Below, piece by piece: positions 3,604 through 32,445 of a stretch of 64,000 nt of DNA. Source of the DNA: Ylistrum balloti (lineage: Eukaryota); the NCBI RefSeq assembly GCF_031769215.1, contig NW_026782152.1, positions 806,001 to 870,000 on the forward strand, given 5' to 3'. Position 1 is the stretch's first letter, and each line of letters begins with the position of its first letter. A program made the position numbers and the translations under genes. The notes under the pieces are model-generated. The model made no database searches and was not told where the DNA came from. It saw only the letters and a list, made by a program, of their open reading frames with translations.

Positions 3604-4272
3604 CATTAAAAAAATAATAACAAGGAATCTCGGACTATACGAACACCATAGCGCCCGTCAAGTTGTACAAAATGCTAGGTGTAAATGGAAATGTAAAATG
3701 ATTTGGCCTGTTCCATGAGTAGGCCTGCACTGAAAAATGTTTGTTATATACTAAAATTATTTCATTATGTTGTACAGAAGAATGTTTGTGAACACGTCTG
3801 TGAAATATCAGATCTTTCGGAAAAGGAATGCTGGCTGTAGAGTGCTGACATCCAAAATTCATTTTCTATTTATAGTAACGGTGACCTGGTTTTTAACTGC
3901 AGAATGTTGAAATGCGAACTCGCACACAATGTGATAGTTGTGGACACGTGTTTAATATGTCGTGACACTTGAATTAAAGATACAATATATAGAGCAGTGA
4001 CGCCGTTTGGTACACGAACGTACGAACAGATCAGTATATCTTTGAAGATTTTTGTCGCGAGGGTATGAAATTTAAAGAGGCACGGGGGGAAGTGTACATG
4101 TAGAGGAAGTTAGGAATGATCTGTAAATGACTTATTTTGATATTTATATGTAAATAAGATATAAATGCGCCATGATTGGTAATAGTGGTTTGTATAAATT
4201 GACTATTAAAAAGCACTGTGTCATCTCTGGACATTATTTACAAACACATTGCAAGAAAAAAAAAAGCGTCGA

Positions 4273-4544
4273 CAGTGGCGTACCGCCCTATACGCAAAAA
4301 CGCAAGTGCGTACACATAAATTGGTCCGCATATTTAAAATTTGTAATTAAGCTCCAATTTGTATCAAAAATTTAACACGAGAAGGTATTGTATATCTGTC
4401 TCAAAATGCAGAAAAAGCCGTTTTGAAGCATATAGATTTTAAAATTTTCCGGGGGAGCATGCCCCCGGACCCCCTTAGCGTGGTTGCGCCTTCGGCGCTC
4501 CAAGTTTGCGTACCCATATATAATCAGGTCACGGTACGCCGCTG
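4273..4544. mobile_element. MITE with CAGTGGCG-type TIRs (hAT-like non-autonomous element)
   Basis: 13-bp TIRs cagtggcgtaccg (4273) and cggtacgccgctg (to 4544), one mismatch; internal GC-rich ggggagcatgcccccggacccc block. No target duplication seen, so the superfamily is tentative. Confidence 0.6.
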
Positions 4545-4779
4545 GTAGAACTAAAAATATATTCATTTTGCACTCATCAATCTTACCTTCAGTTGACGAA
4601 GACAAGTGCAAAGACGGTACGAGTAATCTCCCTTTATGAATTCAGTGATGTATTCTTTTATTTATGAATACGATCGTGCTCTATAGAAGTAAATGAATTC
4701 ATTAGAAACAAAGAAAACACAGGATAGTGAAAAATGTGTGTTTTAATGGCTTATATAGTTTGTATTTTAATATAGGTTT

Positions 4780-5070
4780 GAATTTTTGAAAACATAAACA
4801 ATTTATCAACAATAGAAGTTCCTTGTACACTTGTGTAAGTTTCTGAAAGAATGTTAGTACTATAGTGAGAAATTTAAATTCATATTTATTTTCAGACCAA
4901 ATTTGATTAAAATCCGCACACTCGTTCATGACTAGTTGTAGTTTTTTAGGAAAAATTGATAGACGACGGACGACGGACGCCGAACGCCGGACGCCGGACG
5001 AGGGATGACGGACGCCGGACGCAGCGGTATCCCTATATCTTACTTGGCCCTTCAGGCCAGGTGACATCAA
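4780..5070 (+). mobile_element. Helentron-associated non-autonomous element (HINE/DINE-like)
   Basis: accaaatttgattaaaatcc core-type sequence, (GGACGCC/GGACGAC)n microsatellite 4965-5025, terminal hairpin cttggcc-cttca-ggccagg (5043-5061) then T/A run. The left boundary is approximate. Confidence 0.65.
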
Positions 5071-5577
5071 ATGGTGAAAACATTATTTATCAGATTCAGT
5101 GTACTCCAGTGCCGTATATGGAGTTTACCATCTCAGCATCACATGGGAATGAGAGGAGATATGATAGACGTCAAAGGAATTAGTCACAGAGACAAGCATT
5201 GAGGAGTCAGTCAACGAAAATACTTCTAAAACAATCTCAAATCAGTTTCCTTATAAGCCAACATGAATATACTGGTCTCAGCACCGACCTGATGCTCTCG
5301 TATATAATGCCAATTATGAATTCCAACGTCAGAATATCTATTTCTTGATTTATCGTTTTAACTTAGTAAAATCAATTTGTAGGAGTTATTTCCCTTCACT
5401 AATAGGAGGTTTACCGAATCTTTCTCCAATTCCGTTTTTAACCATACATTTGAATTAATACCAAAGTTAGGAAAGAGATCTTCTTGGCCTTTTGTTTCAT
5501 AAAAAGGATAATTCTTATGAACACAAATAACAAATAAAAAAAAACAGCGGTTGTAAAGAAAGCAATTCAAGTTTATT

Positions 5578-5580
<3 letters not shown>

Positions 5581-5639
<59 letters not shown>

Positions 5640-5657
5640 TTCTTCTTCTTCTTCTTT
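5581..5657. repeat. Compound microsatellite (TCA)~19(TCT)~6
   Basis: Directly visible; lies between the stop codon (5677) and an AATAAA on the minus strand (5572-5577) of the coiled-coil gene. Confidence 0.97.
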
Positions 5658-5676
5658 TTGTCTTAACCCTCGCCGT

Positions 5677-6468
5677 CTAAATTTCTAATTTAAATGACGA
5701 TGGTAAAGGTGTGCTGACGCTTCTGCTTCTTTTAATTGCTTCGATCTTTCTCTCTTTCTTTTCCCATTTCTCCCTCATTCCTTCAATTCGTTTTTCTCTG
5801 TTCTTTCGAGCACGCTCTAATTTCTCTTCTGTTGATATCCTCTGTGGTTTCTCTGTACTTGGAATTCTAGCCAATTTCTTACAGATTTTCTCCCGTCTTT
5901 CTTCTGCCTTCAATTCTCTGTAGATCCGTGCCCTTTCCAGTTTTTCATCCACCTTCACCTTTTCAATTTTGTCGTTCTCATGTGATAGTTTTTTCATCAT
6001 CTTTGCTTCCAGTCGCTTCCGTTTTTCTGCTTGTCTTTCCTCTCTTTTGACTGCCGCCAATTCTCGTCGGTGATCAGACAGTCGAGCCATTTTTCCTTTC
6101 CGTCGTAGTTCTTCGCCCCTCAAAACATCTGCGTCTGCTTCTCGTGTTTTGGAAGGCAGTTTAACAACACTTCTGGTGGTAAGGGGAGGTAACTTTCGAG
6201 GAGGCAAGGAGACTGATTTTATCTTATTTTGTGTGTATTGTGGAACTCCAGGTAGTTGATTATAGGCGTCATTTGAGGTTGACTTGTCTGGAATTTCCTC
6301 ATTTATTTCTACAGTGAATGACACGCCTCCTGATCCCTTATTAGGAATGATCCCCTCCTCTCTCAGCTGCATAAGCACAGTCTGCTCTGTCTTCCGTGAC
6401 AAACCTAACATGGGTGTGCCCTCACTGACTGGAACTCCAACAGGATTCCTAATATGAATGGTTTGAAC
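5677..6468 (-). CDS. Exon 2 of N-acylated coiled-coil protein, stathmin-domain (STMND1)/CCDC198-like
   Basis: Acceptor ctacag|GTT at 6468 is in frame with the 244-aa ORF and adds VQTIHIRNPVGVPVSEGTP. Contains GGVSFTV, PPRKLPPL and repeated EKLERAR..RE K/E/R-rich helices. The family call comes from motif recall, not a search. Confidence 0.8.
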   Translation of the reverse strand, partial: VQTIHIRNPVGVPVSEGTPMLGLSRKTEQTVLMQLREEGIIPNKGSGGVSFTVEINEEIPDKSTSNDAYNQLPGVPQYTQNKIKSVSLPPRKLPPLTTRSVVKLPSKTREADADVLRGEELRRKGKMARLSDHRRELAAVKREERQAEKRKRLEAKMMKKLSHENDKIEKVKVDEKLERARIYRELKAEERREKICKKLARIPSTEKPQRISTEEKLERARKNREKRIEGMREKWEKKERKIEAIKRSRSVSTPLPSSFKLEI

Positions 6469-6872
6469 CTGTAGTGGGAATGAAAGTCTGGAATAATGTG
6501 ACTGGACTTTTATAAATGATTTGATAAGTACGTAATACTTTCTTACATAGTTAAAATGAAAGAGGAATTCTATAAAAAATCAATGAAACCGACGTATTCG
6601 GTCTATTGAGGTTACATTATATAGAAGATAATGACATATATATAAATGTACTTCAGATATTTGACAAAGTATACTGTTGAAATTTTGGCGTCGTGGAAAT
6701 GGAATACACAAATTGGATAAAGTCCAGATATGAAATGGATTCCTATTGTTTTGTCGAAACGTTTAACATATTTTGACTACATCGCTTCAGAGCGTCTCCA
6801 TAATACCTTGTCTGCTAGAGCTTCCTGTCTGACAAAATTACAACTGTTGTGAGCATTTTGTTTTCTAATTAC

Positions 6873-6968
6873 CTTGTTACGTTTGTGATCCCTTCCAAAC
6901 AGCGCCCTCAATCGGCCTCTCTTTGGTTTTTCTTCAAACTCGATCGTCCTTGTGTATGTGCATCCCAT
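6873..6968 (-). CDS. Exon 1 of the same gene (MGCTYTRTIEFEEKPKRGRLRALFGRDHKRNK)
   Basis: ATG at 6968, 96 nt, phase-0 donor AAG|GTAATT matching the phase-0 acceptor at 6468; total 295 aa. Confidence 0.8.
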
Positions 6969-7031
6969 GATTTGCGGAGAAATGTACAAAGCTGCTTTTG
7001 CGAAATGCTTTAAGCATACATAGAAACAAGG

Positions 7032-7125
7032 TATTATGACGTCATAATATTAAAGAACATTTGACGTCATAATGTCGCGGAACTTCCGCTGGACCGCATT
7101 GACTGCTGTTAGATCAACGATTGGC
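7032..7125 (-). promoter_or_regulatory. Proximal promoter: two full CRE sites, an ETS site and a CCAAT box
   Basis: Perfect 18-bp palindrome tattatgacgtcataata (7032-7049), second TGACGTCA (7062-7069), GCGGAAGT on the minus strand (7082-7089) and ATTGG near 7120; all 60-160 bp upstream of ATG 6968. Confidence 0.6.
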
Positions 7126-7414
7126 TATAGTGTTGAGAACTAATGTTTCAAAACTGAATTAAGTATTGTATCAGTCAATGAAAAATTAACCATAACAATA
7201 ACACTGAGCATTACTGCGTTTTGCAGCCAATTATATATTTGCTAGCAAAGCTCTGTCATTCAGAAACACCATAAATGCCATAGCATAACAGTTCAGCGTT
7301 TATATTTATATTCTCTAGACAAATTGCTGGGGTTTTTTTTACATTTTCTTTAGGTTGATAATGTCAATAGAATAGAGGTTCTTGTTTAACACTTGGTCAT
7401 TTAAAGAAATTTTA

Positions 7415-7945
7415 GGAGAATGTGTATACGAAATCGGATGCAAAAACTGCGACGCATCATATAACGGAGAAACAGGCAGGAGATTCGGGGTTCGACTCAA
7501 TGAACATCAGAAAGACGCGGAATACCAAGATCAATAAATCTTCACTTACAGATTATTCCACATGGCAAAATCATATCGTTGACTGGGAAAATTAAAACAA
7601 AATAGTCGACAGGGAAAACAACCTTTTTCAGACGGTTGGTTAAGGAAGCCATCTGGATACGCCGCAGCGGGCCAGTACTTAATAGGGACAATTGGGGCCA
7701 AAGACTATCGCACATTTAGACCAAGTGTTAAACATAGTGTTGCCGAATTGACTACAGTACATGGTTACCATGTAGTGCATATTTTGGTCTTTAATCTGTT
7801 TACCATCTCGTCACACTATTTTCGACCTTAGTGTACATAGGAATATCCGTACCATCTCGTACACACCTTACGTCAGTGCTAGTATGCTCCACGCTGGTCA
7901 TTTGTCTGATGAAAGTGAAAGTGTAGTCATCGAATCTTTACACTC
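7415..7945 (+). mobile_element. Penelope-like retroelement 3' remnant (GIY-YIG endonuclease plus tail)
   Basis: Translates with stops and frameshifts as CVYEIGCKNCDASYNGETGRRFGVRLNEHQKD...NHIVDWE..KIVDRENN..RRLVKEAIWIRRSGPVLNRD, the typical PLE GIY-YIG C-terminus; decayed CTGATGA...GAA motif at 7906-7935. Confidence 0.88.
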
Positions 7946-8514
7946 AAATCTTTTACTAATTATGTTGTAAGAACTATTCTATATTGCTGTTTTATACCAA
8001 TCATAACTTGATTTCAATCAAACTAACAATCAATATCGAAAGTGTACTTCGTCATACGGTTCATCCATTTTAACGGCAAACCATTCCCGTTTTTATCCCC
8101 ACAAAACTGATGTCATAATGGTCGCACGCTCGCGATGTCATTGGTAGTACCTTAAATTTATTTCAATTGATATCAAAATATTCTCATGGTGACCTAAACT
8201 TTCTGCACACGGTAAAAACTGTTTTCTTCTAAACCGAAACATTTTTTAAGTATACCTTGCATAAACATGTATTCGGTACTCGTAATTATTGCCCGACCGT
8301 CATTTGATCAGTTCTGTAAAATGTAATATTTATCCAACCAGTTTAGGCTGAGAAAGAGCGATAACAAAATTGCATTGTGAAAATCCTCGTTGGTTACCTT
8401 TTCTAATAATTCCCGAAATCAAGTGTACAAAGGGAAACCGTTGAAAACCTAAATACGAAATTTGAAAAAGGTCCATCAGAACTTCATAAGAAAACTGGAT
8501 AAACATTCATAGTT

Positions 8515-8745
8515 AAAATCCAAGATGGCCGCCTGCCATCCATTTCGTTTTCCCGATCAATCCCAAGATTTGCAGTGCATATCAATGCATTAAGTAGTAC
8601 CTACATATGTAATATTAGAATGACCATTCATTACTTCTCCAGACTACACTGTGAAAACCAAAATAGTGGCATGGCAGCAATTTTGTTTTTCGATCAGTCC
8701 TGAAATAACTACGCAAAACCATCGCTTAAGGGATCAGTCCTAAAA
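8515..8745. repeat. HINE-type internal repeat remnant (about 2 units)
   Basis: aaaatccaagatggccgcc...ccattt...ttcccgatca followed by a similar degenerate unit (aaaatagtggcatggcagcaattttg...ttcgatcag). Confidence 0.45.
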
Positions 8746-8764
8746 TAACCACGCAAAAAACCGT

Positions 8765-8999
8765 TCTCATGCTCAAGCACGAATTTTGTGCTCAAGCCTT
8801 ATGTCTTGTTTAAGTTAAAAATTAATATATAAGACTGATTTTGCCAAAGATTTAAAAAAAGGACTCCAGGTCAAAGTTATATTCAACGTTTATAATTGAC
8901 ATTTGTATTATTTTATATGATTTATGCGAATTATAAAAAAAATTTGCTTGAGCACAAAATCTATGCTTGAGCTTGAACATGATTTCATGAATACGGGCC
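8765..8999. mobile_element. Truncated MITE related to the one at 23-199
   Basis: Inverted subterminal blocks (gctcaagcacgaattttgtgctcaagc / gcttgagcacaaaatctatgcttgagc) and right end ttcatgaatacgggcc followed by CAG; left TIR missing. Confidence 0.45.
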
Positions 9000-9457
9000 C
9001 AGGTTAAAATCATGACGGTAAGAAATCCTTTCTCAAATAATCAGAAAGTCGTCTCCATATGGTGTCGTTATACAAATGCGCAGTGGCAATTAATCAACTG
9101 CCAGGACATCTTTACAGGAACGACTAGAAAAAGAATGTCCTAAAAAGACACACAGGTGAATGTCACCTGTAGTTATGAATATAAGTATAGATATACGGTA
9201 AAACAACCCTATTGATGAAAAAAAACTAATTCAGATGTAGGTGTTTCCATACATATATCATTTATTTCAATTTAGGCGTATTTCTTTTAGACGATCCCTC
9301 TTGATTGAGATGTCCGTAACCTGTACATGGTTTGCTTTTAAAAGCTTTAGATTAAGGAAACGGAATTCAAAATATGTCATGTGAGAAATTAAGGCAGAGA
9401 CTGGTAGCAAAGGTCTGCGTAAGAGTCGTGAACGTTTATCCATGCCGAGTGCAGCTG

Positions 9458-9580
9458 TCATTTAGAATTAGAACTCTTCTTTTTTATTCGTCTCACCGAT
9501 GACTTCAAGCGAGAAACATCCTTTCGAATTGAAGTTAATGATTGTTCGAGCTCAGTCATCGACATCTCTATGTTCTCAAT
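9458..9580 (-). CDS. Orphan coiled-coil exon B, paralogous to exon 21083-21214
   Basis: Acceptor ttttcatttacag|ATT; IENIEMSMTELEQSLTSIRKDVSRLKSSVRRIKKKSSNSK-stop, compared with IENIQRRLIALEEAVTDMEGEIIQITDDLKS in the Ig gene. An internal phase-0 donor TCG|GTGAGA sits at 9497/9496. Confidence 0.65.
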   Translation of the reverse strand: MENIEMSMTELEQSLTSIRKDVSRLKSSVRRIKKKSSNSK

Positions 9581-9819
9581 CTGTAAATGAAAAAAAGTTT
9601 AATATTATTATTACAATAATGTCAGTTATTCTTATGTTTACATAGCAATCGGATACTGAACATCTTTACTGGTAAAACAATAACAATATATCGGAGCTTA
9701 ACACATGCATGGGACGGCTTCCTATTCGTAAAGATAGAGGCCTTGGCATTGTGACGTCAGAGATCAGGTGATAGTGTCCTCAGAGATGAGAAAGTGGAGT
9801 TTGGGGAAAGTTTTATATT

Positions 9820-10000
9820 GTTTAACGTCTTATCAACATCTAAGATCATAAAGAATTGGTCTTCCCATGTATGCGAAATGAGTACATGTGTTTTGTATGT
9901 GTGTTTGTGGGAGGCTGCGATATATGTGTAAACCTTTTTTATGATAGTGCGAAACTGACTCCGACTTTATAGTGCTATCACACTGAAGTACACTGTCGAT
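9820..10000 (-). mobile_element. tRNA-derived SINE copy (partial)
   Basis: Central motif cttcagtgtgatagcactataaagtcgg (revcomp of 9961-9988) and gacgttaaa-type tail shared with other copies in the window. Confidence 0.6.
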
Positions 10001-10200
10001 GGGACCCTGAAAATTTCATACGGTTACATTATACTGGCGATGGACAAACACGTTTCACAATATAGCTGATATGTCCTGGCTGTTTTGAGAACGTAAAACC
10101 TCAAACATACTTATGTCCTTGCATCAGTAATACGTAACTATATGAACACGACGTTTTATCTGTAGGGTTATCCAAGGACTTAGGAAGTGGACATGTTTAC

Positions 10201-10284
10201 CTGGGTTTTCCTTGGTTCCACCTGGGACTCTAATGCGTCCAATCCAGACTTGACTTCTCCGTACTTCGTCCATATATCATTGAT
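10201..10284 (-). CDS. Orphan coiled-coil exon A, paralogous to exon 21941-22024
   Basis: 84 nt, AG before 10284, donor CAG|GTAAAC at 10201, phase 0-0. INDIWTKYGEVKSGLDALESQVEPRKTQ vs LDLLWSKYGDVRSQLAVLESERSAERDK (same length and phase). The true 5' boundary could extend to about 10379. Confidence 0.7.
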
Positions 10285-11942
10285 CTTTTTATAAACAAAT
10301 ACGATATTATTTAACATTTCAAACAAATCCGCATTCTTTGATACTACAGGGGTTACTAACAATCCCGCGCTCTGCACCTCTAGAACGTGTAATAGTTAAA
10401 ATGGAAAGCACAAACGAAATAATTTGATTGGTTCCAGGAGAAGAAAACCTGACCAATCAATGACTGATGCGCTCCTTCCGAAAATTACAAAGGAGCGACA
10501 CCCAACCAAAGCCATTACAATATACGATCATGCGAGATTCGTTGATGTACATCAAAGGATCAAATTAGTTATATTGTCTTGTCCACAAGGTGTCGCCAAT
10601 AGAACCTTCAATTTTGCCATGACATGTTCCAGGGGTGCAGAGAGCGAAGTGATCATAAACACTAGAATATTTGCTAAATAATATGCGGACAAAACAAAAC
10701 ACATTAATGTTATTTATATTTATAACTGATATCGCATCACCTTAATGATTGAGATAAACTCTAAATATAGAAAACAAACACTTTTTAGTTTGATAATATC
10801 GACATGGAAAAGAAAACTTGAACCATCTGTGTAACAATGTTATTACAAATAATGATTTGATATATTTCACTTTGTTTTTTCTCTAGATATTTAGCACGTT
10901 GTATAGAATATGACTTCTTCTGCGATGACTTACCTCCCCTTGAATGACAGCGGTTTTACTGGACGTCAGCGGGGTTACGTGCAGTGCGATGACCAGTAAA
11001 CTGGCCAGTGCAATCCTGTAGGCCATGTTGTAAACATACTCCATCTAAACAGAACCACTCATTCGTAACGAAATCATGAAAATGCCTTCAGTCAAACCCA
11101 ACTCAAAATGTTAAACGTTCATGCTATTTTAAACACAATTACAAAATTGAGGTGTTGACATTTCGTATGTAATTTAAATTCCTTCGAAAGTAAATCGGTT
11201 ACTGAAATTATTTTCCGTTTTTGTAAACAACATAGTGTTGCATTTGTTTCCTGTTATTGAAAGACATAATCATCGTCTGTGAATGATTTCGGTTATAAAT
11301 ACATCTTCCTGTAGTGTCTAATGCCTTGCTAGTCGGTACTCGTGCAAAATGTTTTGTTTATTTTTTCCCCATGTGTAGTAAAATGTGTTACCTACCAGTA
11401 TTGTACCGTCACACATTCAAAGATTGCATTGAAATATAGAGTACAATATTTGCACGAATAATACTCCAAGAGAGAGAAAAGGTTTTAAATTCGTTTTCAT
11501 TTGATGTACGATTTATGAAAATGTCATTTTTCATTCCACAGCTTTTCATAAATGCAGCTTGTTTATCTGCCCGCTATACCATAACGCTCACTAGTGCGTG
11601 TTGAAGGGGAAATTGTCATTTGTACAACATGATATCACTTATTATATACTTAAAAGGATAAAGATACGGAGGGTAACTTTATTTGCAATATCCTGTGAAC
11701 ACGATGTCAAAAAACAATGAAAATCGGTCAAGTAACTCTCTAGGGTACAGTGCACGTGGTCCTGTACCAAATGATGTATTCTTGTATTGCGTGAAGATGT
11801 CTTCCGGGAAGCACGAAACGGGAAATTTTCGTGCACAGCAGTGTTCTGACATTAAGTTACATTGCTCTTCAAACCATTTGGTAGTCTTCATAGAGACATA
11901 TCATTTTCTAATATTTTGATTAACTTCTGATAGCATTAAACA

Positions 11943-12475
11943 ATGGCACGGCTGACGGAAGTTCAGAGGGCAATTGTGATGATTATGCAAAGTCAAAGGT
12001 AAATATAGATTGCCAGACATTTCGGTGTTCATATTTGCACTATAGATTGTCTTGTTAGACGTCTAATGGAAACTGGGCGGGTTGCTGGCACATCATACGT
12101 TTGAAGGTCTGCCCCTTACTGTTGCTGTCGCCAGCGTCGTATGGCTTGGGTGGCGGCACATGCCCCCAGAATATTCAGATTGTGGCAGTGGAGGCTGGTC
12201 TAGTTTACTGATGAGTCCCGGCTCACCCCGTTTCGAGCAGACGGTCGACGTCGTGTATACCGACGTCGTGGAGAACGTTCTGCCGACTGCAGTAGAGATA
12301 TGTTTGAGGGTGGATCGGCTGAGGAAGTGTGGGGAGGAATCTGACATGGAGTTAAATCACCACTGGTTGTGTTCGTGAGTAATTTAGCTTCCGCTAGGAT
12401 GAGATCAGCCGACCCCATGTTGTCCCATTATTGCAGCAAAACAACCTCACATTCCAGCAGGATAATGCTTGGCCT
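11943..12475 (+). mobile_element. Tc1/mariner transposase remnant
   Basis: Across frameshifts: MARLTEVQRAI..IARHFGVHICTIDCLVRRLMETGRV (HTH), RRMAWVAAH..WRLV*FTDESR..FRADGRRRVYRRRGER..GGS..VWGGI*HGVKSPLVV and HVVPLLQQNNLTFQQDNAWP (first two DDE Asp motifs); stops and internal deletions. Confidence 0.92.
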
Positions 12476-15690: not shown

Positions 15691-15945
15691 TTAAAGATGA
15701 ATTGGTACAATTATTCTGTCGACGCCATTGACACTCATGACCTGACAGACAAATTTGGTAGGTGGAGTAGAAGTTGCAGCCATGTTGACATTGAAAGTGA
15801 CTGTATATCCGGTATCTGTTGAGGTCTCATTGGCCGTGTACATTGGGGATTTTCCCCAGATGAAGTCACCCCAGTCGTCATTCTCTCGACAGCTGACGGC
15901 GGGTTTAGGGGGATCTGAACGTTTCACAAACAGCTTAACCACAAC
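15691..15945 (-). CDS. Terminal exon of secreted coiled-coil/Ig-like protein (last Ig-like domain)
   Basis: Acceptor ttgtag|GTT (phase 0); VVVKLFVKRSDPPKPAVSC...KFVCQVMSVNGVDRIIVPIHL-TAA; AATAAA on the minus strand near 15350 and 15275. Confidence 0.85.
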   Translation of the reverse strand, partial: VVVKLFVKRSDPPKPAVSCRENDDWGDFIWGKSPMYTANETSTDTGYTVTFNVNMAATSTPPTKFVCQVMSVNGVDRIIVPIHL

Positions 15946-16133
15946 CTACAATAACAAGAATATAACACATAGGTAGAGATGCAGAAGACCCGAGCTTAGA
16001 GCCTGATTTTATTTACACATTCTTTTATTGTTTTATGAGACAATCTTCAAAGCATTTCATCACTATCAGCAAATATCGATACAATATTAAACTTCTTCAA
16101 TTATAAAATCAACTTTCAGTAAATCAAACCCAC

Positions 16134-17071
16134 ATTTTCATCTGGTCCTCGAAGAACCTCGTATTTCAGGAATTTAGGAGGAATAACAATTCTTGTAGGT
16201 AACGACAGCCGGCGTTCTACTCCATTCGATGTGGCAGCACATACAAAACTAATGTTAGCAACTTCCGGTTCGGTGGGTTTTATCACGAGAATTACTGAAG
16301 TGACGTATTTTCTGTTTAATACAACCGACGCATATCCGGTTATCGACTCGTGTCCATCTCGGTGAAGTTTTAGTATCGCCATTCTCGGTGGTGGATTACC
16401 CATCGCCACACATTGTATCACACTGCTATCCCCGACGCCAAGTTTGAATTCTGTGGGAAAGAAGTCTTTTAGGTAAACTAATGATCCCTCGGGCAACGTA
16501 GCACCGCCATGCCGCAAAATGTCCGAGTCGTAAATCTGGAACTCAACGCTTTTGAACACGTCATCAAGTCTTTTCACATTAATAAAGCACGATAATAACC
16601 CTCCGTGGTCCATCTCAAGAAGGTCGTATGTGAACCTATAAGTATCACCTAGCAAAGAACCATTGGTAACATTGAGTATCCCGCCACGAGAAGCTAGTTT
16701 CCCATCCAAATCTAACCAACTTCCGGCTGTTATTGCTTTATAAGAAGTCTGGTTTCCATTGAGCCCCATAAAGCCAAGTGACAAACTGATGTCTTTATTT
16801 CTAAGCATTTCTGACCGTAATTCGAAACTACCGGAAGTAACGTTGAATTGAGAATGGACTTGTCCACCTCTGTAGGATACTGTGTAATCATAAACACGTA
16901 GAAAACTGTGTTTAGCGGCATTGAACAGGAGAGCTATGGCAATATCATGATTTTTAACCAGGAGAGATATTACTTTCTGTCCATTCCGGATCGTAGAGGA
17001 CTGGTTACCACGGAGTTCCAAAGTGTGTATATTCCCTCCACTGAATTCAACACGAGTTAACAAATCGTCAT
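16134..17071 (-). CDS. Large exon of secreted coiled-coil/Ig-like protein
   Basis: 938-nt open exon; acceptor ttttaccag|AT (phase 1), donor AAT|GTGGGT (phase 0); Ig I-set-like motif VIQCVAMGNPPPRMAILK...ISFVCAATS; several N-x-S/T sites. Confidence 0.92.
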
Positions 17072-17774
17072 CTGGTAAAAAAAAAAAAAAAAAAAATACA
17101 TTTTTTTATTTTTTATGTTATCCAATGTATCTGTTAGTTTTCGTATTTTGTGAAGGTTAGGGTAAGTGAACGTTCAATATATCACTGGAGAATAACATAT
17201 TTGTTCTCTTATGAAGTTCTTATAAACTTCATTTGTCATTTCTCTCCAATACAACTCTTTTGATGCCTACATTATTATTATTATTATTACATTCTTAACG
17301 ATCCGTCAAAACATAAAAGGTCATCAGAGCCATTAACCGGTGAAACACAATGCGAAAGCTTGTTTTAAAACATGAGTGTTTGCTCGTTCGAATGCCAAGC
17401 ACGATAAATAAAAATGGAAAAAAAATTCAATTAATCATGCCAAGGGAAAATTTACACACCAATGCATATACACGTTTTATTACTGAAGGCTTTTTAGAAA
17501 ATGATTGTTATATCTCAACCGAAATGCCGAAATGAGAAAAAATATTTCGATTGCTTAATGACCTGCAAACGACAGAAAAAAATGTTAAGTATCTCATATC
17601 GTTTTGTTTCCTTTTTTCCTGAAAACAGCTAAAGTTATATAATGTCAGTTTCGAGGCATACTGGAGTCAGGAATGGCCGCTTGTATAGCCATCAACATGT
17701 CACAGCTTGGAAACAGAACCAATAGCTTTTAAGGCAAAGACAAAGTGGTGTCGAATATTTAGTTTTACATACCA

Positions 17775-18120
17775 AATCGTTCTTTCAACAGCTATTGTCA
17801 TTTATAGACGGCCTTTCTATGAATGCGAAATGATCGTGTGAAGGAGGCTGCGTTATGTTCATTTAAACCTTTTGATGGTACGGGACCGATACCAAATTAT
17901 AGTGCTACCACAATGAAGTATACCAATAATTGCGCACAGCAGCACACTCCCTCCAGTCACATTATACTGACAACCAGCAAACCAATCGTTTCCCGACAGT
18001 AATTCTATTTGCTCAGTAAAGAATAATAACCACAATATTTCGCAGATTCTAAGATTACTCGGCCTGGGCTTGGGAAGAAAGTATTTCTCACTTGGGGCTG
18101 ACTTGAATTGAACCATTAAA
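17775..18120 (-). mobile_element. Near full-length tRNA-derived SINE in the Ig gene intron
   Basis: B-box-like ggttcaattc near 18110, central cttcattgtggtagcactataa (about 17900-17922), tail similar to the other copies; accounts for ORF 17859-18116. Confidence 0.6.
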
Positions 18121-18242
18121 AGTATAAATTGTGTAGAACATTAACACAATTACTCAACATTGTTCATACAAATCGAATGATGATGTATCACGATTGCTTC
18201 CAGTTCTTTTTATAGCCAGTAAAAGAACACAGAATTTTACAT

Positions 18243-19250
18243 GTGGTGAATGAAAGTCTTCATATCTATCTTGGTTCACAGTTTTTTGGTCAAGTTACAG
18301 CTGAGGATATAGTAGAACATTTAAATAAAGACTACACCAAACTGAATTCTAATAAAAATAAATTCAAATGGAATGGTCCAAACTTCAACAGGAAATTCCA
18401 TAAACTTATTACAAAACAGTTGAAGAATGACTGTGAATTGCATGCGATTCATAACAGCATTAAATCTGGAACAGTAACTAATGAATTATCTCTTGATTTC
18501 TTTCCGGGAAGTATTTACTTCCCTTACAAAAATTCACCATCCAGACGTGAGGATTTAGAAGAGTTCTCTAGGATTTATGATAGTTGAAAGATGCCTCTCA
18601 AATTTTACAAGTGGCCCAAGAATGTGCTTGTAAAAGATCAATTAAAATATGGCCTATTCTTGTGAATTATGTGCAAGAGATTGAAGCAAAGGAGAAAGAA
18701 AACTACATGTAACTCGTATTTTACCAAAAGCATAACTTGTAATACACTTTAATTTTTCATATTGCTAGCTTGTGCACTGGAACCATTTTTAGGATTTTAA
18801 GCCAGTGTTGTCATGCATGGCTAATGATATTTCGTGTCCTTTGAAAGGTTTGTTGAAACGGTTAATTAGGAATGGTCACGGATCAAGTTCAAGGGTCAGG
18901 AATATCAGTAATGCAGATAATGGATTTTCGACTGGAAGCAAGACAGTTTCTGTGCAACACCTGTACTCAGATTCTTTAGAAGTGTCCCAAATCATATTCC
19001 TTAGTGAGAAATATGTCCTGTCTAGATCACAAGGGAGGAAACAAACAGGGCAGAATGTAAATTCCGATTTAAAAATATACACAGGAATGCAGGAAAGGTT
19101 CATGGCCAAAGTTGTTAAAAGCTTTAATTGCGTATAATGCCTACATTTGACACATTGTGAAAGATCTGATGGAACTGATTGCATCTATTTACAAGGATGT
19201 TCTGCACAAGTTGAAAAATTTCTAATGACCATTGCAACTATTGTCAGCAA
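18243..19250 (+). mobile_element. hAT-superfamily-like (ZNF862-type) transposase remnant, antisense in intron
   Basis: YLGSQFFGQVTAEDI...WNGPNFNRKF...CELHAIHNSIKSG...SPSRREDL..PLKF, LEPFL, LKGLLKRLI and CPKSYSLVRNMSCLD resemble motifs of invertebrate hAT-related transposases; many stops and frameshifts. Confidence 0.75.
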
Positions 19251-20285
19251 CAAAATGTTTTCCTAAGATCAATTTAAAATGGTGAAATTGGTGGAAATAC
19301 CCCCTTCTAATGACAAATTAATCTGTCTAAATAAAGCACATTGTGGAATCTGGAACTAGGTCACTGACTGGTCATAGATTATATGCGAAGGGTTGGATAA
19401 ATACATAGAGCCGGGCACATTTTCACTGACAAATAAGTACACCTGACATCTTCACATATTCAAAATTATCACAATATTATTTTTTGAAGGTTCCCACACA
19501 TGGCATATCTCAATTGTGCCGATATTGAACGACATTCATGTATTATTCGAGAACAGCAAATTTCACCGTATGATGTATACAGAGCCCATTAATTTCAGAA
19601 ACAATACAAAGAAGCTGGTTAAAAGGTTCCCCAGACCATTCAATTATTTAAATAACGCATTCGTGAACAAATGTTGAAAGGGCCAGTAACGGGGTAGCTA
19701 TATGTATATAATTAAGAGGAATGAAGCTCCGTGTACATACATGCAGAAGGTATAGCGTGAAATTCCGTCATCAGACGTTCAGAACTCGGAGTCACCGTTC
19801 AACCGTTTTATTACTATCAATTAGATTGTTACTATACAAGAGGAAAGCGAATGACCCATCAAAGTGATATCTTGTATTATTATTATAATTACTATCGGCA
19901 TGCTAACACATGAAAGGTCATTAGGGCCATCAACCGGTGAACTGAAAAGTTAAATATATCCAACACATTTCGAATGTAAATGTGACTTACAGATTTTAAC
20001 ACTTTGAATGCAAGTGCAATAATCGATTAAATTACTTTTACATGGTCATGCATTTATATTAATTTACAAATAAAAAGAAATAGTATTTTGTTTTGCTTCT
20101 ACATCTAGTATTGGATACGGAGTCAAAAAACTAAGAAAATCTATTTGTACTTCCCCTCTATTTCATGCTTGCCGACTCTCAAGTTCTGATAACGTCAAAA
20201 AAATTTTGATTTTAGCATCTACTGCTTATTAAAGAGTTGAACGAGCTTCATCTATCCACATAACAAGGAACTGTTTGGACATTAC

Positions 20286-20436
20286 CTAGAATAGGAACCC
20301 GGTTCTCAAACCAAAGGTATGAGAAGGGTCGGCTGGTTTCTATGTCAACAGCAAGGACAATGTAGGACGCATTCATTTGAATAGATCCTCTTCTCAGGGC
20401 AAATGGAAATGGTTCCCAGTTCGCAGGTTCCGTCGC
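20286..20436 (-). CDS. Exon of secreted coiled-coil/Ig-like protein
   Basis: Acceptor ttacag|GCG, donor CTAG|GTAATG; 151 nt, phase 0 to 1, matches the next exon (G+AT=Asp); ATEPANWEPFPFALRRG...FSYLWFENRVPIL. Confidence 0.88.
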
Positions 20437-21082
20437 CTGTAATGAAAATAATAATAAAACGCAAACTGAAATGTCAATCTGGACATTAAACGTTTTAGAA
20501 ATTAATAAGCATTATTTCCATGCAAGCTCCATTGTATTCATAGCACGTACTTGGTACACGACTTATTCATCTTTAATACATATTCTATATATTACAGATA
20601 TTTGAATGCGTGAGTCAATGTCTAGTCAGTTGATATTTATCGACAATAGTGAGTCATATATTGAATCATAGAAGAAGTGCTCATGCCATTCTAAATTTTG
20701 ACATTCTTTTCAATCAACGATTTCCATCATCGAAATTAATGCCTTTAGTATCAATGACGATTCATACAAAGACGAATCAGCTATTTTATGTTCGTTAATT
20801 TGGTTCTACTGTATCAAACTTTGAATTTGTATTGAAAGGCGCTTATCATCTGTATCTTTTGTACAATATCCATATCCGTTATAATATATTGATTACCAGT
20901 TAAAGTAATCTAATTTCTTATACAATAAGAACTTATATTTTAGGATTAAAATGGGAAGCGAAATGACGAAATGAATAGAGTACTTGCAAAAATTGGATTG
21001 GAATCATTTTATACGCGAATTCGAAGAAAGATTTTTATGGAGACTCCTGAAAAGATACAATAAGACAGAGTGTTGTATTTAC

Positions 21083-21214
21083 ATTAGTTCCGTCGTCCTG
21101 AGCCGTGTTTGATGCCGCTATACTCTTCAAGTCATCTGTTATCTGAATTATTTCCCCTTCCATGTCAGTTACAGCTTCTTCCAATGCAATCAGTCGGCGC
21201 TGAATATTTTCGAT
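21083..21214 (-). CDS. Coiled-coil exon of secreted protein
   Basis: ttag|ATC ... AAT|GTAAAT, 132 nt, phase 0-0; IENIQRRLIALEEAVTDMEGEIIQITDDLKSIAASNTAQDDGTN, with heptad pattern. Confidence 0.88.
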
Positions 21215-21216
21215 CT

Positions 21217-21222
<6 letters not shown>

Positions 21223-21253
<31 letters not shown>
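21223..21253. repeat. (TA)n microsatellite adjacent to a splice acceptor
   Basis: Directly visible, a few bases on the intron side of the AG at 21216-21215. Confidence 0.95.
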
Positions 21254-21255
<2 letters not shown>

Positions 21256-21940
21256 ATAACCATCTAGATTACGCTGGTAGTCATACCAACTAAGACAAAA
21301 AGATATTAATTGTAGACACTAGATTATCTAGACTATAAAATTTACATCTTAGCTCTTAGTGTATACAGGATAAGGTCAGAAAAAAGACATATCAATTTAT
21401 TAATTAGTATACTAACAACGATTTGACTTGGTGTTCCAACAAGAAAGGAAGACAGCTGTATGATGCAGTGTTTTTCTTATATTGATATGTGCATTGAAAG
21501 GTATTGTTCATTTGGTTGTCATTGGCTGTTGAACATCATAGTAATGGTTGTTGCCCTTTAAGTATAGCATATAAAGTGTTAATCACTTGTGGGTTTTGTA
21601 CAATCATTTACAAGGTTAACTTTGAATCTGAAACAGCGAATCAATCAATGTTTGGAGAAGGCAACAATTATTTGAATTCAATGAAAATAAAAGCAATGTT
21701 TGTAGTCTGGCTTCTTGTTAGTGAAGAAGGTAGGTTCTTGAATTTTGTAGTGATTGTCTTAATTATAGTGTAGTTTCCGTGTTGTGTATACTAATATAAA
21801 CATGCACCTCTCTGGTCTAAAAATAAATCTAGCATTTGTCAATTAAAAGTATCATGTAATGAAATATCATAGTAGGCGTTGCAATTTGAAACTACATGAT
21901 CAAAACACCTTATAAAATCGGTGAAATACATCTGGAATAC

Positions 21941-22024
21941 CTTATCCCTTTCAGCTGATCTTTCGGATTCAAGCACAGCCAACTGGCTTCTGACGTCTCC
22001 ATATTTGCTCCATAGTAAGTCAAG
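21941..22024 (-). CDS. Coiled-coil exon of secreted protein
   Basis: tttttcag|CTT ... AAG|GTATTC, 84 nt, phase 0-0; LDLLWSKYGDVRSQLAVLESERSAERDK. Confidence 0.88.
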
Positions 22025-22392
22025 CTGAAAAAGATTTTTTATCTATGAAAACCAGAATTTGTCGTTCTCAAGTAACAATGCCTTATCCTAATTCATTTAG
22101 TATTGACATGGTAAGCAATTAAAAAACACAAACGCATGTACAGATAAAAGCCTTTTTATATTTATAATTAATTGGCAATTATTGCACGATTTTATGCGCC
22201 TAGTTTCATAAAATGTAAATGAAAAAGGACTGGGGGTTCCAATAAACCTTTTGAAGTTCATTTACACATGTGTATTCTATTAAATGTTTTTCTTCGTTTT
22301 AATGTCATAATAGAATGGTTCATATTATTTTATAACAATTTACAAAGCATATTTATCTCCACACTCTAACAGTTTTGATTCGGATAATTCAC

Positions 22393-22422
22393 CTTGTCTA
22401 TACAAAGGTTCATCACAGGAAC
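22393..22422 (-). CDS. Candidate 30-nt micro-exon (VPVMNLCIDK)
   Basis: Branch-like gctaat plus tccag| acceptor, AAG|GTGAAT donor, phase 0-0; the upstream intron would be only 51 nt. Confidence 0.5.
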
Positions 22423-22473
22423 CTGGACATTAGCGATGATATAACATTGTAAATGTCCTTAATGTGTACTTAC

Positions 22474-22563
22474 TTCTGTTGCCGATGGAGATTTTCTTGT
22501 CGACACTAACTGAACACAAGAAAGACAGGCTGTCATAGAGATAAAATAGAAAATGGTGACCAT
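22474..22563 (-). CDS. First coding exon, signal peptide (MVTIFYFISMTACLSCVQLVSTRKSPSATE)
   Basis: ATG 22563, hydrophobic N-terminus, consensus donor GAA|GTAAGT, phase 0. Confidence 0.8.
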
Positions 22564-26049: not shown

Positions 26050-26600
26050 AATCATGGTTGTCCTGAGGCTGATTTGATAAAAGTACATTTGTTAGTTACC
26101 TCAAGATTAAAATGGGTGTTTTCAATATGGATTATATAAACAATTTCCCTGTCAGAGGTAATTAAGGAAAGTAGGACACAACTGATGCTTACGATAGTTT
26201 CTCGTAAAAAACCCTGACATGTTGTAGTGTCTTTGGAGGGGGATTGATAAATTAGTCACGCGTTTTGATTTTGTGGTTTTTTAATGAAAAAACTAAACAG
26301 CAATTGAGAAAATTTACTTAACTGTTAGGTCACTGGTTTGGAATTATGAAAGAGAAGACACTCAGTGTATAATTGGCAGGATAACGAATTTAAAACAAAT
26401 CTCGGACTGTCTTTTATCATTTTCGTGACCTTAATAACCATATAATGGCATGGGAGTTTTAGTCAATAGTATTCGAAGTGATAAGGAGAAACGGTCATCC
26501 TTGGACAATAAGTCCTTAAGTAACTTTGGATTCAGTCATTGAACTTAGCAGTGTTGTCTCTAGCCTTAGGTCATGAAAAAGTGAGGTATAGGAATGGGCC
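26050..26600 (-). mobile_element. Highly decayed LINE reverse transcriptase remnant (L1/Tx1-like)
   Basis: Frameshifted traces VQG*PFSPY (cf. RQGCPLSP) and MSG..RNYRK (cf. SGLKINYDK) in the expected order. Confidence 0.35.
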
Positions 26601-30720: not shown

Positions 30721-32445
30721 AGTTGGCTGGGATTCCCAACAGCCAGACAGAGAATGTTATCTAGATAGACGTAAAGTCTTCAGGGATCCCTAACACTCAG
30801 AACGAAGATGGTTGTCTAGCAAGACATCAACAGGAAGATTAGTATGACGATGGCTGTCAAGGGCGACGCCAACAGAAAGGGTCATATGAAGACAGGTGTT
30901 TAGGGAGACAAAATGGGAGCAACCGATCAGATTTGGTCCATGCAATTTCCAATTTGTAAGAAAGGAAAAATAGTCGTCTCTTACAACAGGCACCGTTAAA
31001 GTGTAAGCATATTCCTTCTCCACTCTTACATGGGTAGGGAATAACTACATCTGCGTTCAGTCTATTACATATTAATTCAATCTGACCACGGATAGATCTA
31101 CAATTAGTCTTAATATGACCCTCCAACCTTGCAAGTTTTTTTAACCAATTAAATCCGTGCAAGGAAGCACGAGCGGTTCACATTCCAAACATTGAATATA
31201 CGCCAAATAAACATATTTATTAGATTCTGTTTATCCTACATTTTTCCATCTGTTTATACTGCAAACGTAGAGGGAATTTTTGTGCATCGGATGTACAATG
31301 TTGTTAAGAGCAGGCGAGATGAGTTTTTGTAATTTGCCAGGACGCCATACACTAAAACGAACTGAGTATTGATAAAATTTGGTGATGGTAGATCGGTCTG
31401 GTTTGGAGATATTCACTTATGTATTCACCTTTCCTACATAACGTATGTGTCTTTCAGGGAGGCGAGTATTCACAGCAGTGACAGTTATGATTAAATCCAT
31501 GTAGCGAAATACTTGGTCTTTTTATTTAATGTTATGGCATTTTAAGTTAACCACTAACTTAGGCAATATCCTAACAAAACAGCATGAGGTTCGAAATGTG
31601 TCATTAATCGCTCAAAATACACAGCAGGTCAACTGATAATATTCCAGCATTTCATTTGGCATTTGTCAACGGCGTCACAGCCACCATACCTATTTATTAA
31701 TGTATATTTAATTTTTTATTAGATACTTGTACTTGTCTTTATCAGTTCTGACTCTAGATATGGATTTATCCATTGGAAGAACCCAGGTTTATTATTACTA
31801 TCACTGATGATATATGGTTGTTGTAAGAATTCGGTCTGATTGATTTTAATTTCATGTCTTTTAAATTGAACCCATTGATTGTTTACGCCATACCCCCACA
31901 AGACAAATCGTACATAGTTTGTTGTTATCGCATCACTAGAGCCAAAGGACAGGTCAACAAATATTTTCAAGGTAAGAACACGTGTGTATTTTGACTTAAT
32001 GTTTGGTATTCCATCACATAGAGAGAATATTGTGTTAACTTCACAACTTTTTTTTCGATAAAAAATCCAAAACAGCTTTAACTTGACATTGACCTAATTT
32101 TGTTAATTAAAAAGAATAGAGGCTTAACTTTGTGACAGAAAATACTGCACTGTGAAATCAACAAGTTGCCAGAGTCCAAAGAGGTCAATGGCCTCTTGTT
32201 TATGTAAGTTGCTTAACAATTTGTTAAGAGGGTGACCGGAACGTGTCTTATAAAGTTCCCTGTTTAACTTACACTTATTTCAAATAATAAACAGCTATGC
32301 TATGAAGTATATTCTATATAAGAAAAAACACACGATGCGTCAGTATATCCTTAACTGATAAATACTAATATTCCTTATTAAAGATATTCTTTCATTGATG
32401 TATTGCCTATATCATATTCCACTGAAGCTTAAACTGTACACTTAC

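What the first reader, a model, noticed from the sequence alone, without database searches (positions are those of the whole stretch)
9458..10284. Headless, Ig-less paralogue of the coiled-coil module, 11.7 kb downstream of its parent gene
Seen: two exons match the Ig gene's coiled-coil exons in order, phase and (first exon) exact 84-nt length (INDIWTKYGEVKSGLDALES vs LDLLWSKYGDVRSQLAVLES; IENIEMS vs IENIQRR). Their frames are open and splice sites are intact despite heavy amino-acid divergence, which suggests selection. I found no convincing ATG/signal-peptide exon between 10.4 and 15.4 kb and no Ig exons after them. Inference, three options. (a) The phase-0 leader at 22474/22393 splices over the whole Ig block into 10284, giving a short secreted coiled-coil-only isoform that could hetero-oligomerise with or titrate the Ig form. 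(b) They are a separate small gene with an unrecognised 5' exon. (c) The internal donor TCG|GTGAGA (9497) joins a downstream phase-0 acceptor, including exon 2 of the stathmin-like gene at 6468, swapping its acylated N-terminus for a coiled coil.
Basis: partly seen in the sequence, partly recalled or inferred. Interest (0 to 1): 0.72.

Follow-up and report, generated by a model that had tools for sequence, protein, structure and literature searches.

The report
Small secreted coiled-coil gene, scallop
The two exons belong to an ordinary, already annotated three-exon scallop gene with its own start exon; it makes a 105-residue secreted protein that is only a coiled-coil helix, an old conserved partial copy of the neighbouring gene, and what it does is untested.

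Summary
The two exons are real. They match exons 2 and 3 of the upstream coiled-coil/Ig-like gene in order, strand, phase and the 84-nt length.

The gene is not headless. A start exon lies at 11044-10934, 650 nt upstream. It runs from ATG to a GAG|gtaagt donor in phase 0 and reads as a signal peptide.

The three exons translate exactly to RefSeq "uncharacterized protein LOC132550849 [Ylistrum balloti]" (105 aa). Mizuhopecten yessoensis has a 101-aa orthologue. Argopecten irradians has an intact, unannotated copy. In all three the gene sits just downstream of the parent, on the same strand.

- **Selection:** dN/dS is 0.13-0.20.
- **Promoter:** the 300 nt upstream of the start codon align between genera; the introns and the 3' flank do not.
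- **Protein:** a signal peptide, one helix of nine unbroken heptads and a basic tail. No Ig remnants follow.

So option (b), a separate small gene, is right. The chimera with the stathmin-like gene has no support.

Whether the protein joins the parent's stalk, like a microProtein, is inference only. No RNA reads were available. The scan holds no earlier report of this gene on other DNA.

The parts
11108..11231 (-). Conserved non-coding block upstream of the start codon (candidate promoter or 5'UTR). It contains the 8-mer AAATGTCA at 11163-11156.
   Evidence: Local alignment of the 300 nt upstream gives z=21.5 (Y. balloti vs M. yessoensis), 12.3 (vs A. irradians) and 5.1 (M. yessoensis vs A. 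irradians). Introns and the 3' flank give z between -1.1 and 1.8 (alignment). The 8-mer is shared with the parent promoters.
10934..11044 (-). Exon 1 (coding part): ATG and a 37-codon signal-peptide-like leader, ending GAG|gtaagt in phase 0.
   Evidence: It equals residues 1-37 of RefSeq product P0001. Orthologous leader exons lie at L007 10001-10099 and L009 32265-32348.
10285..10933 (-). Intron 1. It holds a high-copy inverted-repeat (MITE-like) element at about 10366-10646.
   Evidence: Inverted arms 10366-10403 and 10609-10646. Contig depth reaches 5585, with opposite-strand joints, in run X1.
10201..10284 (-). Exon 2: 84 nt, phase 0 at both ends, the first four heptads with the W-x-K-Y-G-E-V motif.
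   Evidence: It equals P0001 residues 38-65.
9581..10200 (-). Intron 2 (gtaaac...ttacag).
   Evidence: It does not align between genera. In X1's contig, among the differences shown, it carries 18 substitutions against 1 in exon 3 (partial list).
9458..9580 (-). Exon 3 coding part: five more heptads, the basic tail VRRIKKKSSNSK and stop TGA at 9460-9458.
   Evidence: It equals P0001 residues 66-105.
9261..9266 (-). AATAAA, 192 nt after the stop codon; candidate polyadenylation signal.
   Evidence: and the sequence. Its use was not tested.
15691..22563 (-). Parent gene LOC132550823. Exons 22563-22474, 22024-21941, 21214-21083, 20436-20286, 17071-16134 and 15945-15691. It encodes a signal peptide, the same nine-heptad coiled coil, then about 450 residues of all-beta, Ig-like sequence.
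   Evidence: Pfam Ig_3 is sub-threshold only (E=0.018). The AlphaFold model has low confidence: helix 18-83, then beta strands.

Best explanation
Shown (about 0.95):
- This is an independent three-exon protein-coding gene, RefSeq LOC132550849 of the saucer scallop Ylistrum balloti.
- It encodes a 105-residue precursor: a signal peptide, one long helix of nine unbroken heptads and a short basic tail.
- It arose when the head of the upstream coiled-coil/Ig-like gene LOC132550823 was duplicated in tandem. Exons 2-3 were certainly copied; the leader exon probably was.
- The duplication predates the split of Ylistrum, Mizuhopecten and Argopecten. The copy has been kept under purifying selection since, with its own start exon and its own conserved upstream region.

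Inferred:
- A lone 76-residue amphipathic helix cannot stand by itself, so the secreted protein must act by forming a parallel coiled-coil bundle.
- My favoured partner (about 0.4) is the stalk of the parent protein. The small protein would then act as an extracellular microProtein that changes how many Ig-like heads one assembly carries.
- Self-assembly with a function of its own is about equally likely.
For: - **Gene model:** the exon translations equal P0001 residue for residue. All splice sites are canonical.
- **Orthologues:** P0002 in M. yessoensis is 74% identical over 72% of P0001. An intact unannotated three-exon copy lies in A. irradians. In both, the gene sits 2-6 kb downstream of the parent orthologue on the same strand.
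- **Selection:** Nei-Gojobori dN/dS on exons 2+3 is 0.148, 0.133 and 0.196. Fisher p runs from 4e-8 to 1.3e-6. This is as tight as the parent's coiled-coil exons, at 0.17-0.21.
- **Own promoter:** the upstream 300 nt align between genera (z 21.5, 12.3, 5.1). Introns and the 3' flank do not.
- **Fold:** AlphaFold gives one helix over residues 28-103, with pLDDT above 90 over most of it. Hydrophobic residues fill heptad position a in 9 of 9 heptads and position d in 8 of 9. The parent has the same register, at 8 of 9 each.
- **Hints of pairing with the parent:**
  - The small protein is basic (mature pI 9.6-10); the parent coil is acidic (pI 4.4).
  - Parent g to small e' charge pairs are 5 attractive and 1 repulsive in Y. 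balloti, and 4 and 1 in M. yessoensis. Homotypic pairs give 1-2 attractive and 1 repulsive.
  - The 8-mer AAATGTCA lies upstream of both paralogues in every species examined.
Against: - No RNA evidence could be obtained. The one public run that holds the stretch is genomic DNA. Transcription and the splice junctions therefore rest on RefSeq models in two species plus conservation.
- The M. yessoensis reference reads CG, not AG, at the exon-2 acceptor.
- No copy was found within 10 kb of the Pecten maximus parent.
- Against pairing with the parent: only about 26% identity remains between the paralogues. The small proteins carry a conserved proline in heptad 4 that the parents lack. The reciprocal small g to parent e' pairs are 0 attractive and 1 repulsive. 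The shared 8-mer is weak evidence, because orthologous promoters are not independent samples.
Confidence: 0.8

Rival explanations
1. It is an independent secreted coiled-coil protein that assembles only with itself. It has a function unrelated to the parent, for example binding anionic surfaces or matrix through the basic tail.
For: It has its own conserved upstream region, which shows no alignable similarity to the parent's (z about 1). Surface positions have diverged strongly from the parent. A paralogue-specific proline and the basic tail VRR[IL]KxKSS are conserved in three genera. The a/d core is perfect, so the helix is self-sufficient for bundling.
Against: Homotypic g-e' charge pairs are poor, at 1 attractive and 1 repulsive. 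The N-terminal motif W-x-K-Y-G-[ED]-[VI] and the helix length and register have stayed the same as in the parent since the duplication. Tandem linkage is kept in three genera.
Confidence: 0.4
2. One reading: there is no start exon of its own. The parent's leader (donor at 22474) splices over the Ig block into 10284, giving a coiled-coil-only isoform of the parent gene.
For: Both sites are phase 0, so the join would be in frame. No RNA data exclude a rare read-through isoform.
Against: A dedicated leader exon with a consensus donor lies 650 nt upstream. The RefSeq model uses it, and it is conserved in three genera together with an upstream non-coding block.
Confidence: 0.03
3. It is a dead partial duplicate (pseudo-exons) whose open frames are chance.
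For: It lacks all Ig exons. No transcript evidence could be obtained here.
Against: dN/dS is 0.13-0.20 at dS 0.8-2. The frames are intact, the splice sites are canonical except the CG acceptor in the M. yessoensis assembly, and the exon-2 length (84 nt) is the same in three genera, while the introns are unalignable.
Confidence: 0.02
4. One reading: the internal site TCG|GTGAGA (9497) is a donor that joins exon 2 of the downstream stathmin-like gene (6468).
For: The donor-like string TCR|GTRAGA is conserved in all three species, and phase 0 fits.
Against: That string encodes the conserved Ser-Val-Arg. The tail after it is conserved as protein, with synonymous changes, so it is translated. M. 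yessoensis has no stathmin-like exon within 10 kb downstream. The downstream gene has its own ATG exon at 6966.
Confidence: 0.03

Closest known systems
microProteins / small interfering peptides, e.g. plant LITTLE ZIPPER versus HD-ZIPIII and Id versus bHLH (definition in PMC6003976 and PMC5381583; the examples are from my own knowledge)
   Same: It is small (105 aa precursor, about 76 aa mature). It keeps a single protein-protein interaction domain. It is derived from, and sequence-related to, a larger multi-domain protein, and it lacks that protein's effector domains.
   Different: It is secreted rather than nuclear. The parent is not a transcription factor. Physical interaction with the parent is untested. 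It sits in tandem beside its parent.
The parent gene family: LOC132550823 (Y. balloti), LOC110455121 (M. yessoensis), LOC117326815 (P. maximus) and an A. irradians protein. These are scallop 'uncharacterized / Ig-like domain-containing' proteins.
   Same: It shares the exon plan for exons 1-3: a phase-0 leader, an 84-nt exon and a coiled-coil exon. It shares the W-x-K-Y-G-[ED]-[VI] motif and the nine-heptad register.
   Different: It has no beta-sandwich part. A basic tail replaces the acidic linker. It has a conserved proline in heptad 4. Identity to the parent is about 26%.
Coiled-coil-necked secreted oligomeric receptors of invertebrate immunity: collectin necks, mollusc C1q-domain and fibrinogen-related proteins (own knowledge, analogy only)
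   Same: The parent shows the same logic: a signal peptide, an oligomerising helix and binding heads.
   Different: No sequence or Pfam link was found. The small gene has no head at all.

Membership tests
Any curated Pfam family | Score at or above the family's gathering cut-off | tested here: not met
   P0001 and P0002 hit about 40 coiled-coil families, all below cut-off. The best is NPV_P10 at 21.7 bits against 29.8. This is generic heptad signal only.
microProtein | Small, with a single interaction domain | tested here: met
   The precursor is 105 aa. There is one helix over residues 28-103, nine heptads and no other domain.
microProtein | Evolutionarily related to the interaction domain of a larger multi-domain protein | tested here: met
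   Exon-wise BLASTP gives E=1e-7 and E=1e-4. The alignment with four parent orthologues is gap-free over the first 64 columns. The exon plan is the same.
microProtein | Binds the related large protein and alters its complex | not testable with these tools
   The only support is indirect: charge complementarity and g-e' pair counts. No multimer prediction or experiment was available.
Parent family (scallop coiled-coil + Ig-like secreted proteins) | The all-beta, Ig-like region after the coiled coil | tested here: not met
   The stop codon is at 9460-9458. tblastn finds no remnant of the parent's beta region outside the parent gene in the window.
Processed or dead duplicate (pseudogene) | Disrupted frame or neutral evolution (dN/dS near 1) | tested here: not met
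   The frames are intact in three genera, and dN/dS is 0.13-0.20.
Expressed, spliced gene | Reads across both splice junctions | not testable with these tools
   The only run offered (X1) is genomic DNA: its contig runs through the intron. Support is indirect, from RefSeq models in two species.

The most novel reading that the evidence does not exclude
It is an extracellular microProtein. The secreted coiled-coil-only paralogue co-assembles with the stalk of its Ig-like neighbour and so sets how many binding heads each oligomer carries. The pair would have been kept as a linked, co-regulated unit across scallops. This would extend the microProtein principle from nuclear transcription factors to secreted receptor-like proteins of an invertebrate.
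Probability: 0.3. Interest if true: 0.6.

Novelty: new member of a known kind. Interest (0 to 1): 0.3.

Why it matters
The puzzle that made this finding look striking, a coding module with no way to start translation, disappears. The gene has an ordinary start exon and is already in RefSeq.

What remains is a modest, testable case. A lineage-restricted secreted protein has been reduced to nothing but its parent's oligomerisation helix, and it has been kept for a long time beside that parent. If it does co-assemble with the parent, it would be a natural valency regulator of a secreted Ig-like protein. If it does not, it is one more small scallop-specific secreted protein of unknown role.

The work also yields some annotation corrections:
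- the start codon of the Y. balloti parent model;
- the 5' end of the P. maximus parent model;
- a missing gene in A. irradians.

Tried and rejected
- **RNA evidence:** The look-up of sequencing runs gave a single run of unrecorded type. Laid on 6001-12000, its contig runs through intron 2 and part of intron 1, so it is DNA. No junction information came of it.
- **Own-genome paralogue searches:** the exon peptides, a two-row profile and the parent's large exon found only the two known places, or only themselves.
- **Profile search of 1.84 billion representatives:** apart from the two paralogue clusters, the listed matches are almost all long proteins with several matched stretches, i.e. generic coiled coils. 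None of the 150 listed carries the W-x-K-Y-G motif at a matching place.
- **Pfam:** sub-threshold noise only.
- **Parent structure model:** too poor (mean pLDDT 53.8) for a fold search, so none was run.
- **Literature:** the five LOC identifiers gave no papers.
- **Pecten maximus:** no small-gene exons within 10 kb on either side of the parent. The tools could not reach further, so its presence there is unresolved.
- **A frame error of mine:** the parent last-exon dN/dS line was computed one base out of frame and is not used.
- **No joined model:** I neither built nor searched a joined exon model. The joined product came back as database protein P0001 from a search with the exon-2 open frame given by reference.

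Full report
**What the sequence shows**

On the minus strand, 10284-10201 is an 84-nt open exon between aaaaag| and |gtaaac. Exon 9580-9458 follows ttacag| and ends in TGA. The upstream gene has, in the same order and phase, an 84-nt exon 22024-21941 and a coiled-coil exon 21214-21083.

BLASTP gives E=1e-7 for the first pair and E=1e-4 for the second. Their leaders show no significant similarity. Searches of the whole 648.5-Mb assembly with the exon peptides and a two-row exon-2 profile found the exon-2 module at these two places only; each exon-3 peptide found only itself. The parent's large exon is single-copy. The observed paralogy is real and more than chance.

**The missed head**

Reading upstream of 10284, I found an ATG at 11044. 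It opens a 37-codon frame with a typical signal-peptide shape: a short polar start, a hydrophobic core, and small residues before a Lys. The frame ends in GAG|gtaagt at 10934 in phase 0.

**Database identity**

A word search with the 71-residue open frame around exon 2, given by reference, returned two proteins.
- P0001 is 'uncharacterized protein LOC132550849 [Ylistrum balloti]', 105 aa.
- P0002 is 'LOC110455106 [Mizuhopecten yessoensis]', 101 aa.

P0001 equals the translations of 11044-10934, 10284-10201 and 9580-9461, residue for residue. I did not build or search a joined model myself; the joined product came from the database. So the window is from the saucer scallop, and the gene is already annotated with a dedicated start exon.

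**The parent**

The open frame of the parent's large exon recovered four proteins:
- LOC132550823 (Y. balloti, 540 aa)
- LOC110455121 (M. yessoensis, 552 aa)
- LOC117326815 (Pecten maximus, 534 aa)
- an Argopecten irradians protein (552 aa)

All are unnamed apart from a UniRef label 'Ig-like domain-containing'. Pfam gives only a sub-threshold Ig_3 hit (E=0.018). The AlphaFold model is poor (mean pLDDT 53.8) but shows helix 18-83 followed by beta strands. 'Ig gene' is therefore plausible but not shown.

**Conservation and age**

- In M. yessoensis (L007) the parent's exons 3-6 lie at 4197-7875. The small gene lies at 10001-12373 on the same strand.
- In A. irradians (L009) the parent ends at 26156. 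An intact small gene that the annotation did not call lies at 32265-32348, 32748-32831 and 33063-33179. Its splice sites are canonical and its exon 2 is also 84 nt.
- In P. maximus nothing was found within 10 kb of the parent, and I could not look further.

The duplication therefore predates the common ancestor of Ylistrum, Mizuhopecten and Argopecten.

Nei-Gojobori dN/dS on exons 2+3:

| Pair | dN/dS | dS |
|---|---|---|
| Y. balloti - M. yessoensis | 0.148 | 0.81 |
| Y. balloti - A. irradians | 0.133 | 1.97 |
| M. yessoensis - A. irradians | 0.196 | 1.56 |

Fisher p runs from 4e-8 to 1.3e-6. This is as constrained as the parent's own coiled-coil exons, at 0.17-0.21.

The 300 nt upstream of the ATG align between genera, with z = 21.5, 12.3 and 5.1 against shuffles. 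Both introns and the 3' flank do not, with z between -1.1 and 1.8 (alignment). This points to the gene's own cis-regulatory region.

No trace of the parent's beta region lies near the small gene.

**The protein**

AlphaFold predicts the signal helix and then one continuous helix over residues 28-103, with pLDDT above 90 over most of it. If exon 2's first residue is taken as heptad position a, hydrophobic residues fill a in 9 of 9 heptads and d in 8 of 9. The four parents hold the same register at 8 of 9 each, and the alignment is gap-free over 64 columns.

The small proteins have features of their own: a conserved Pro in heptad 4 and a basic tail VRR[IL]KxKSS. The parents have an acidic linker at that point. 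The mature small protein has pI 9.6-10; the parent coil has pI 4.4.

- **(b)** is right.
- **(c)** The donor-like TCR|GTRAGA is conserved in all three species, but it encodes Ser-Val-Arg. The tail behind it is conserved as protein, with synonymous differences, so the exon is read through. M. yessoensis has no stathmin-like exon within 10 kb downstream. The downstream gene starts at its own ATG at 6966.

Minor isoforms cannot be excluded. The only run offered was genomic DNA, with a contig that runs through intron 2 and part of intron 1, so no RNA evidence was obtained. In that contig the differences shown are 18 substitutions in intron 2 against one in exon 3 (S101N), but the list was truncated.

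**How it probably works (inference)**

A secreted 76-residue amphipathic helix must bundle with other helices. Several things fit co-assembly with the parent stalk, in the manner of microProteins (definition: PMC6003976, PMC5381583).
- The core, length and N-terminal motif have stayed the same as in the parent.
- The net charges are opposite.
- Parent g to small e' charge pairs are attractive in excess: 5 to 1 in Y. balloti and 4 to 1 in M. yessoensis. Homotypic pairs give 1-2 to 1.
- Tandem linkage is kept in three genera.
- The 8-mer AAATGTCA lies in the sense strand upstream of both paralogues in all five promoters examined (0 of 2000 shuffles). Orthologous promoters are not independent, and the two upstream regions are otherwise not alignable.

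None of this is a test. I give the microProtein reading about 0.3-0.4 and self-assembly with a function of its own about 0.4.

**Known or new**

The profile search of 1.84 billion representatives found only the two paralogue clusters as full-length, single-stretch matches. No paper mentions the loci. The gene model is known. Its origin as a head-only copy of its neighbour, and the possible extracellular microProtein role, appear undescribed.

**Verdict**

This is an ordinary, annotated, conserved small gene, and the 'headless' puzzle was a reading miss. A modest hypothesis remains that is worth a bench test.

Noticed in passing
window 11163-11156 and 22665-22658 (minus strand); L007 upstream of 10001; L009 upstream of 32265 and of 10001: The 8-mer AAATGTCA lies in the sense strand within 300 nt upstream of the ATG of the small gene in three scallops, and of the parent in the two species where the parent's 5' end was available. 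Several promoters hold 2-3 copies. It may be a shared regulatory site.
   Followed up: partly
window 10366-10646: Intron 1 of the small gene holds a high-copy inverted-repeat, MITE-like element: 38-nt arms, contig depth in the thousands and opposite-strand joints in run X1. Other high-copy repeats lie at about 7200-8000 and 8400-9000.
   Followed up: partly
window 22563-22536: The RefSeq parent model P0003 starts at the second Met (540 aa). The in-frame ATG at 22563 adds nine residues that complete a signal peptide. The M. yessoensis and A. irradians orthologues support this longer start.
   Followed up: partly
L008 9992-10150 (Pecten maximus): The P. maximus parent model P0005 begins inside the sequence just upstream of exon 2 and has no signal peptide. 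Its true first exon is probably missing from the model.
   Followed up: no
L007 11218-11219 (Mizuhopecten yessoensis): The exon-2 acceptor of the annotated small gene reads CG instead of AG in assembly GCA_002113885.2. It may be an allele, an assembly error or a non-canonical site.
   Followed up: no
L009 32265-33179 (Argopecten irradians): An intact three-exon orthologue of the small gene is present but was not called as a gene in GCA_041381155.1.
   Followed up: yes
window 6966-5677 (minus strand): The downstream gene starts with Met-Gly-Cys, a possible N-acylation motif. Its large second exon is Lys/Arg/Glu-rich and has no Pfam match.
   Followed up: no
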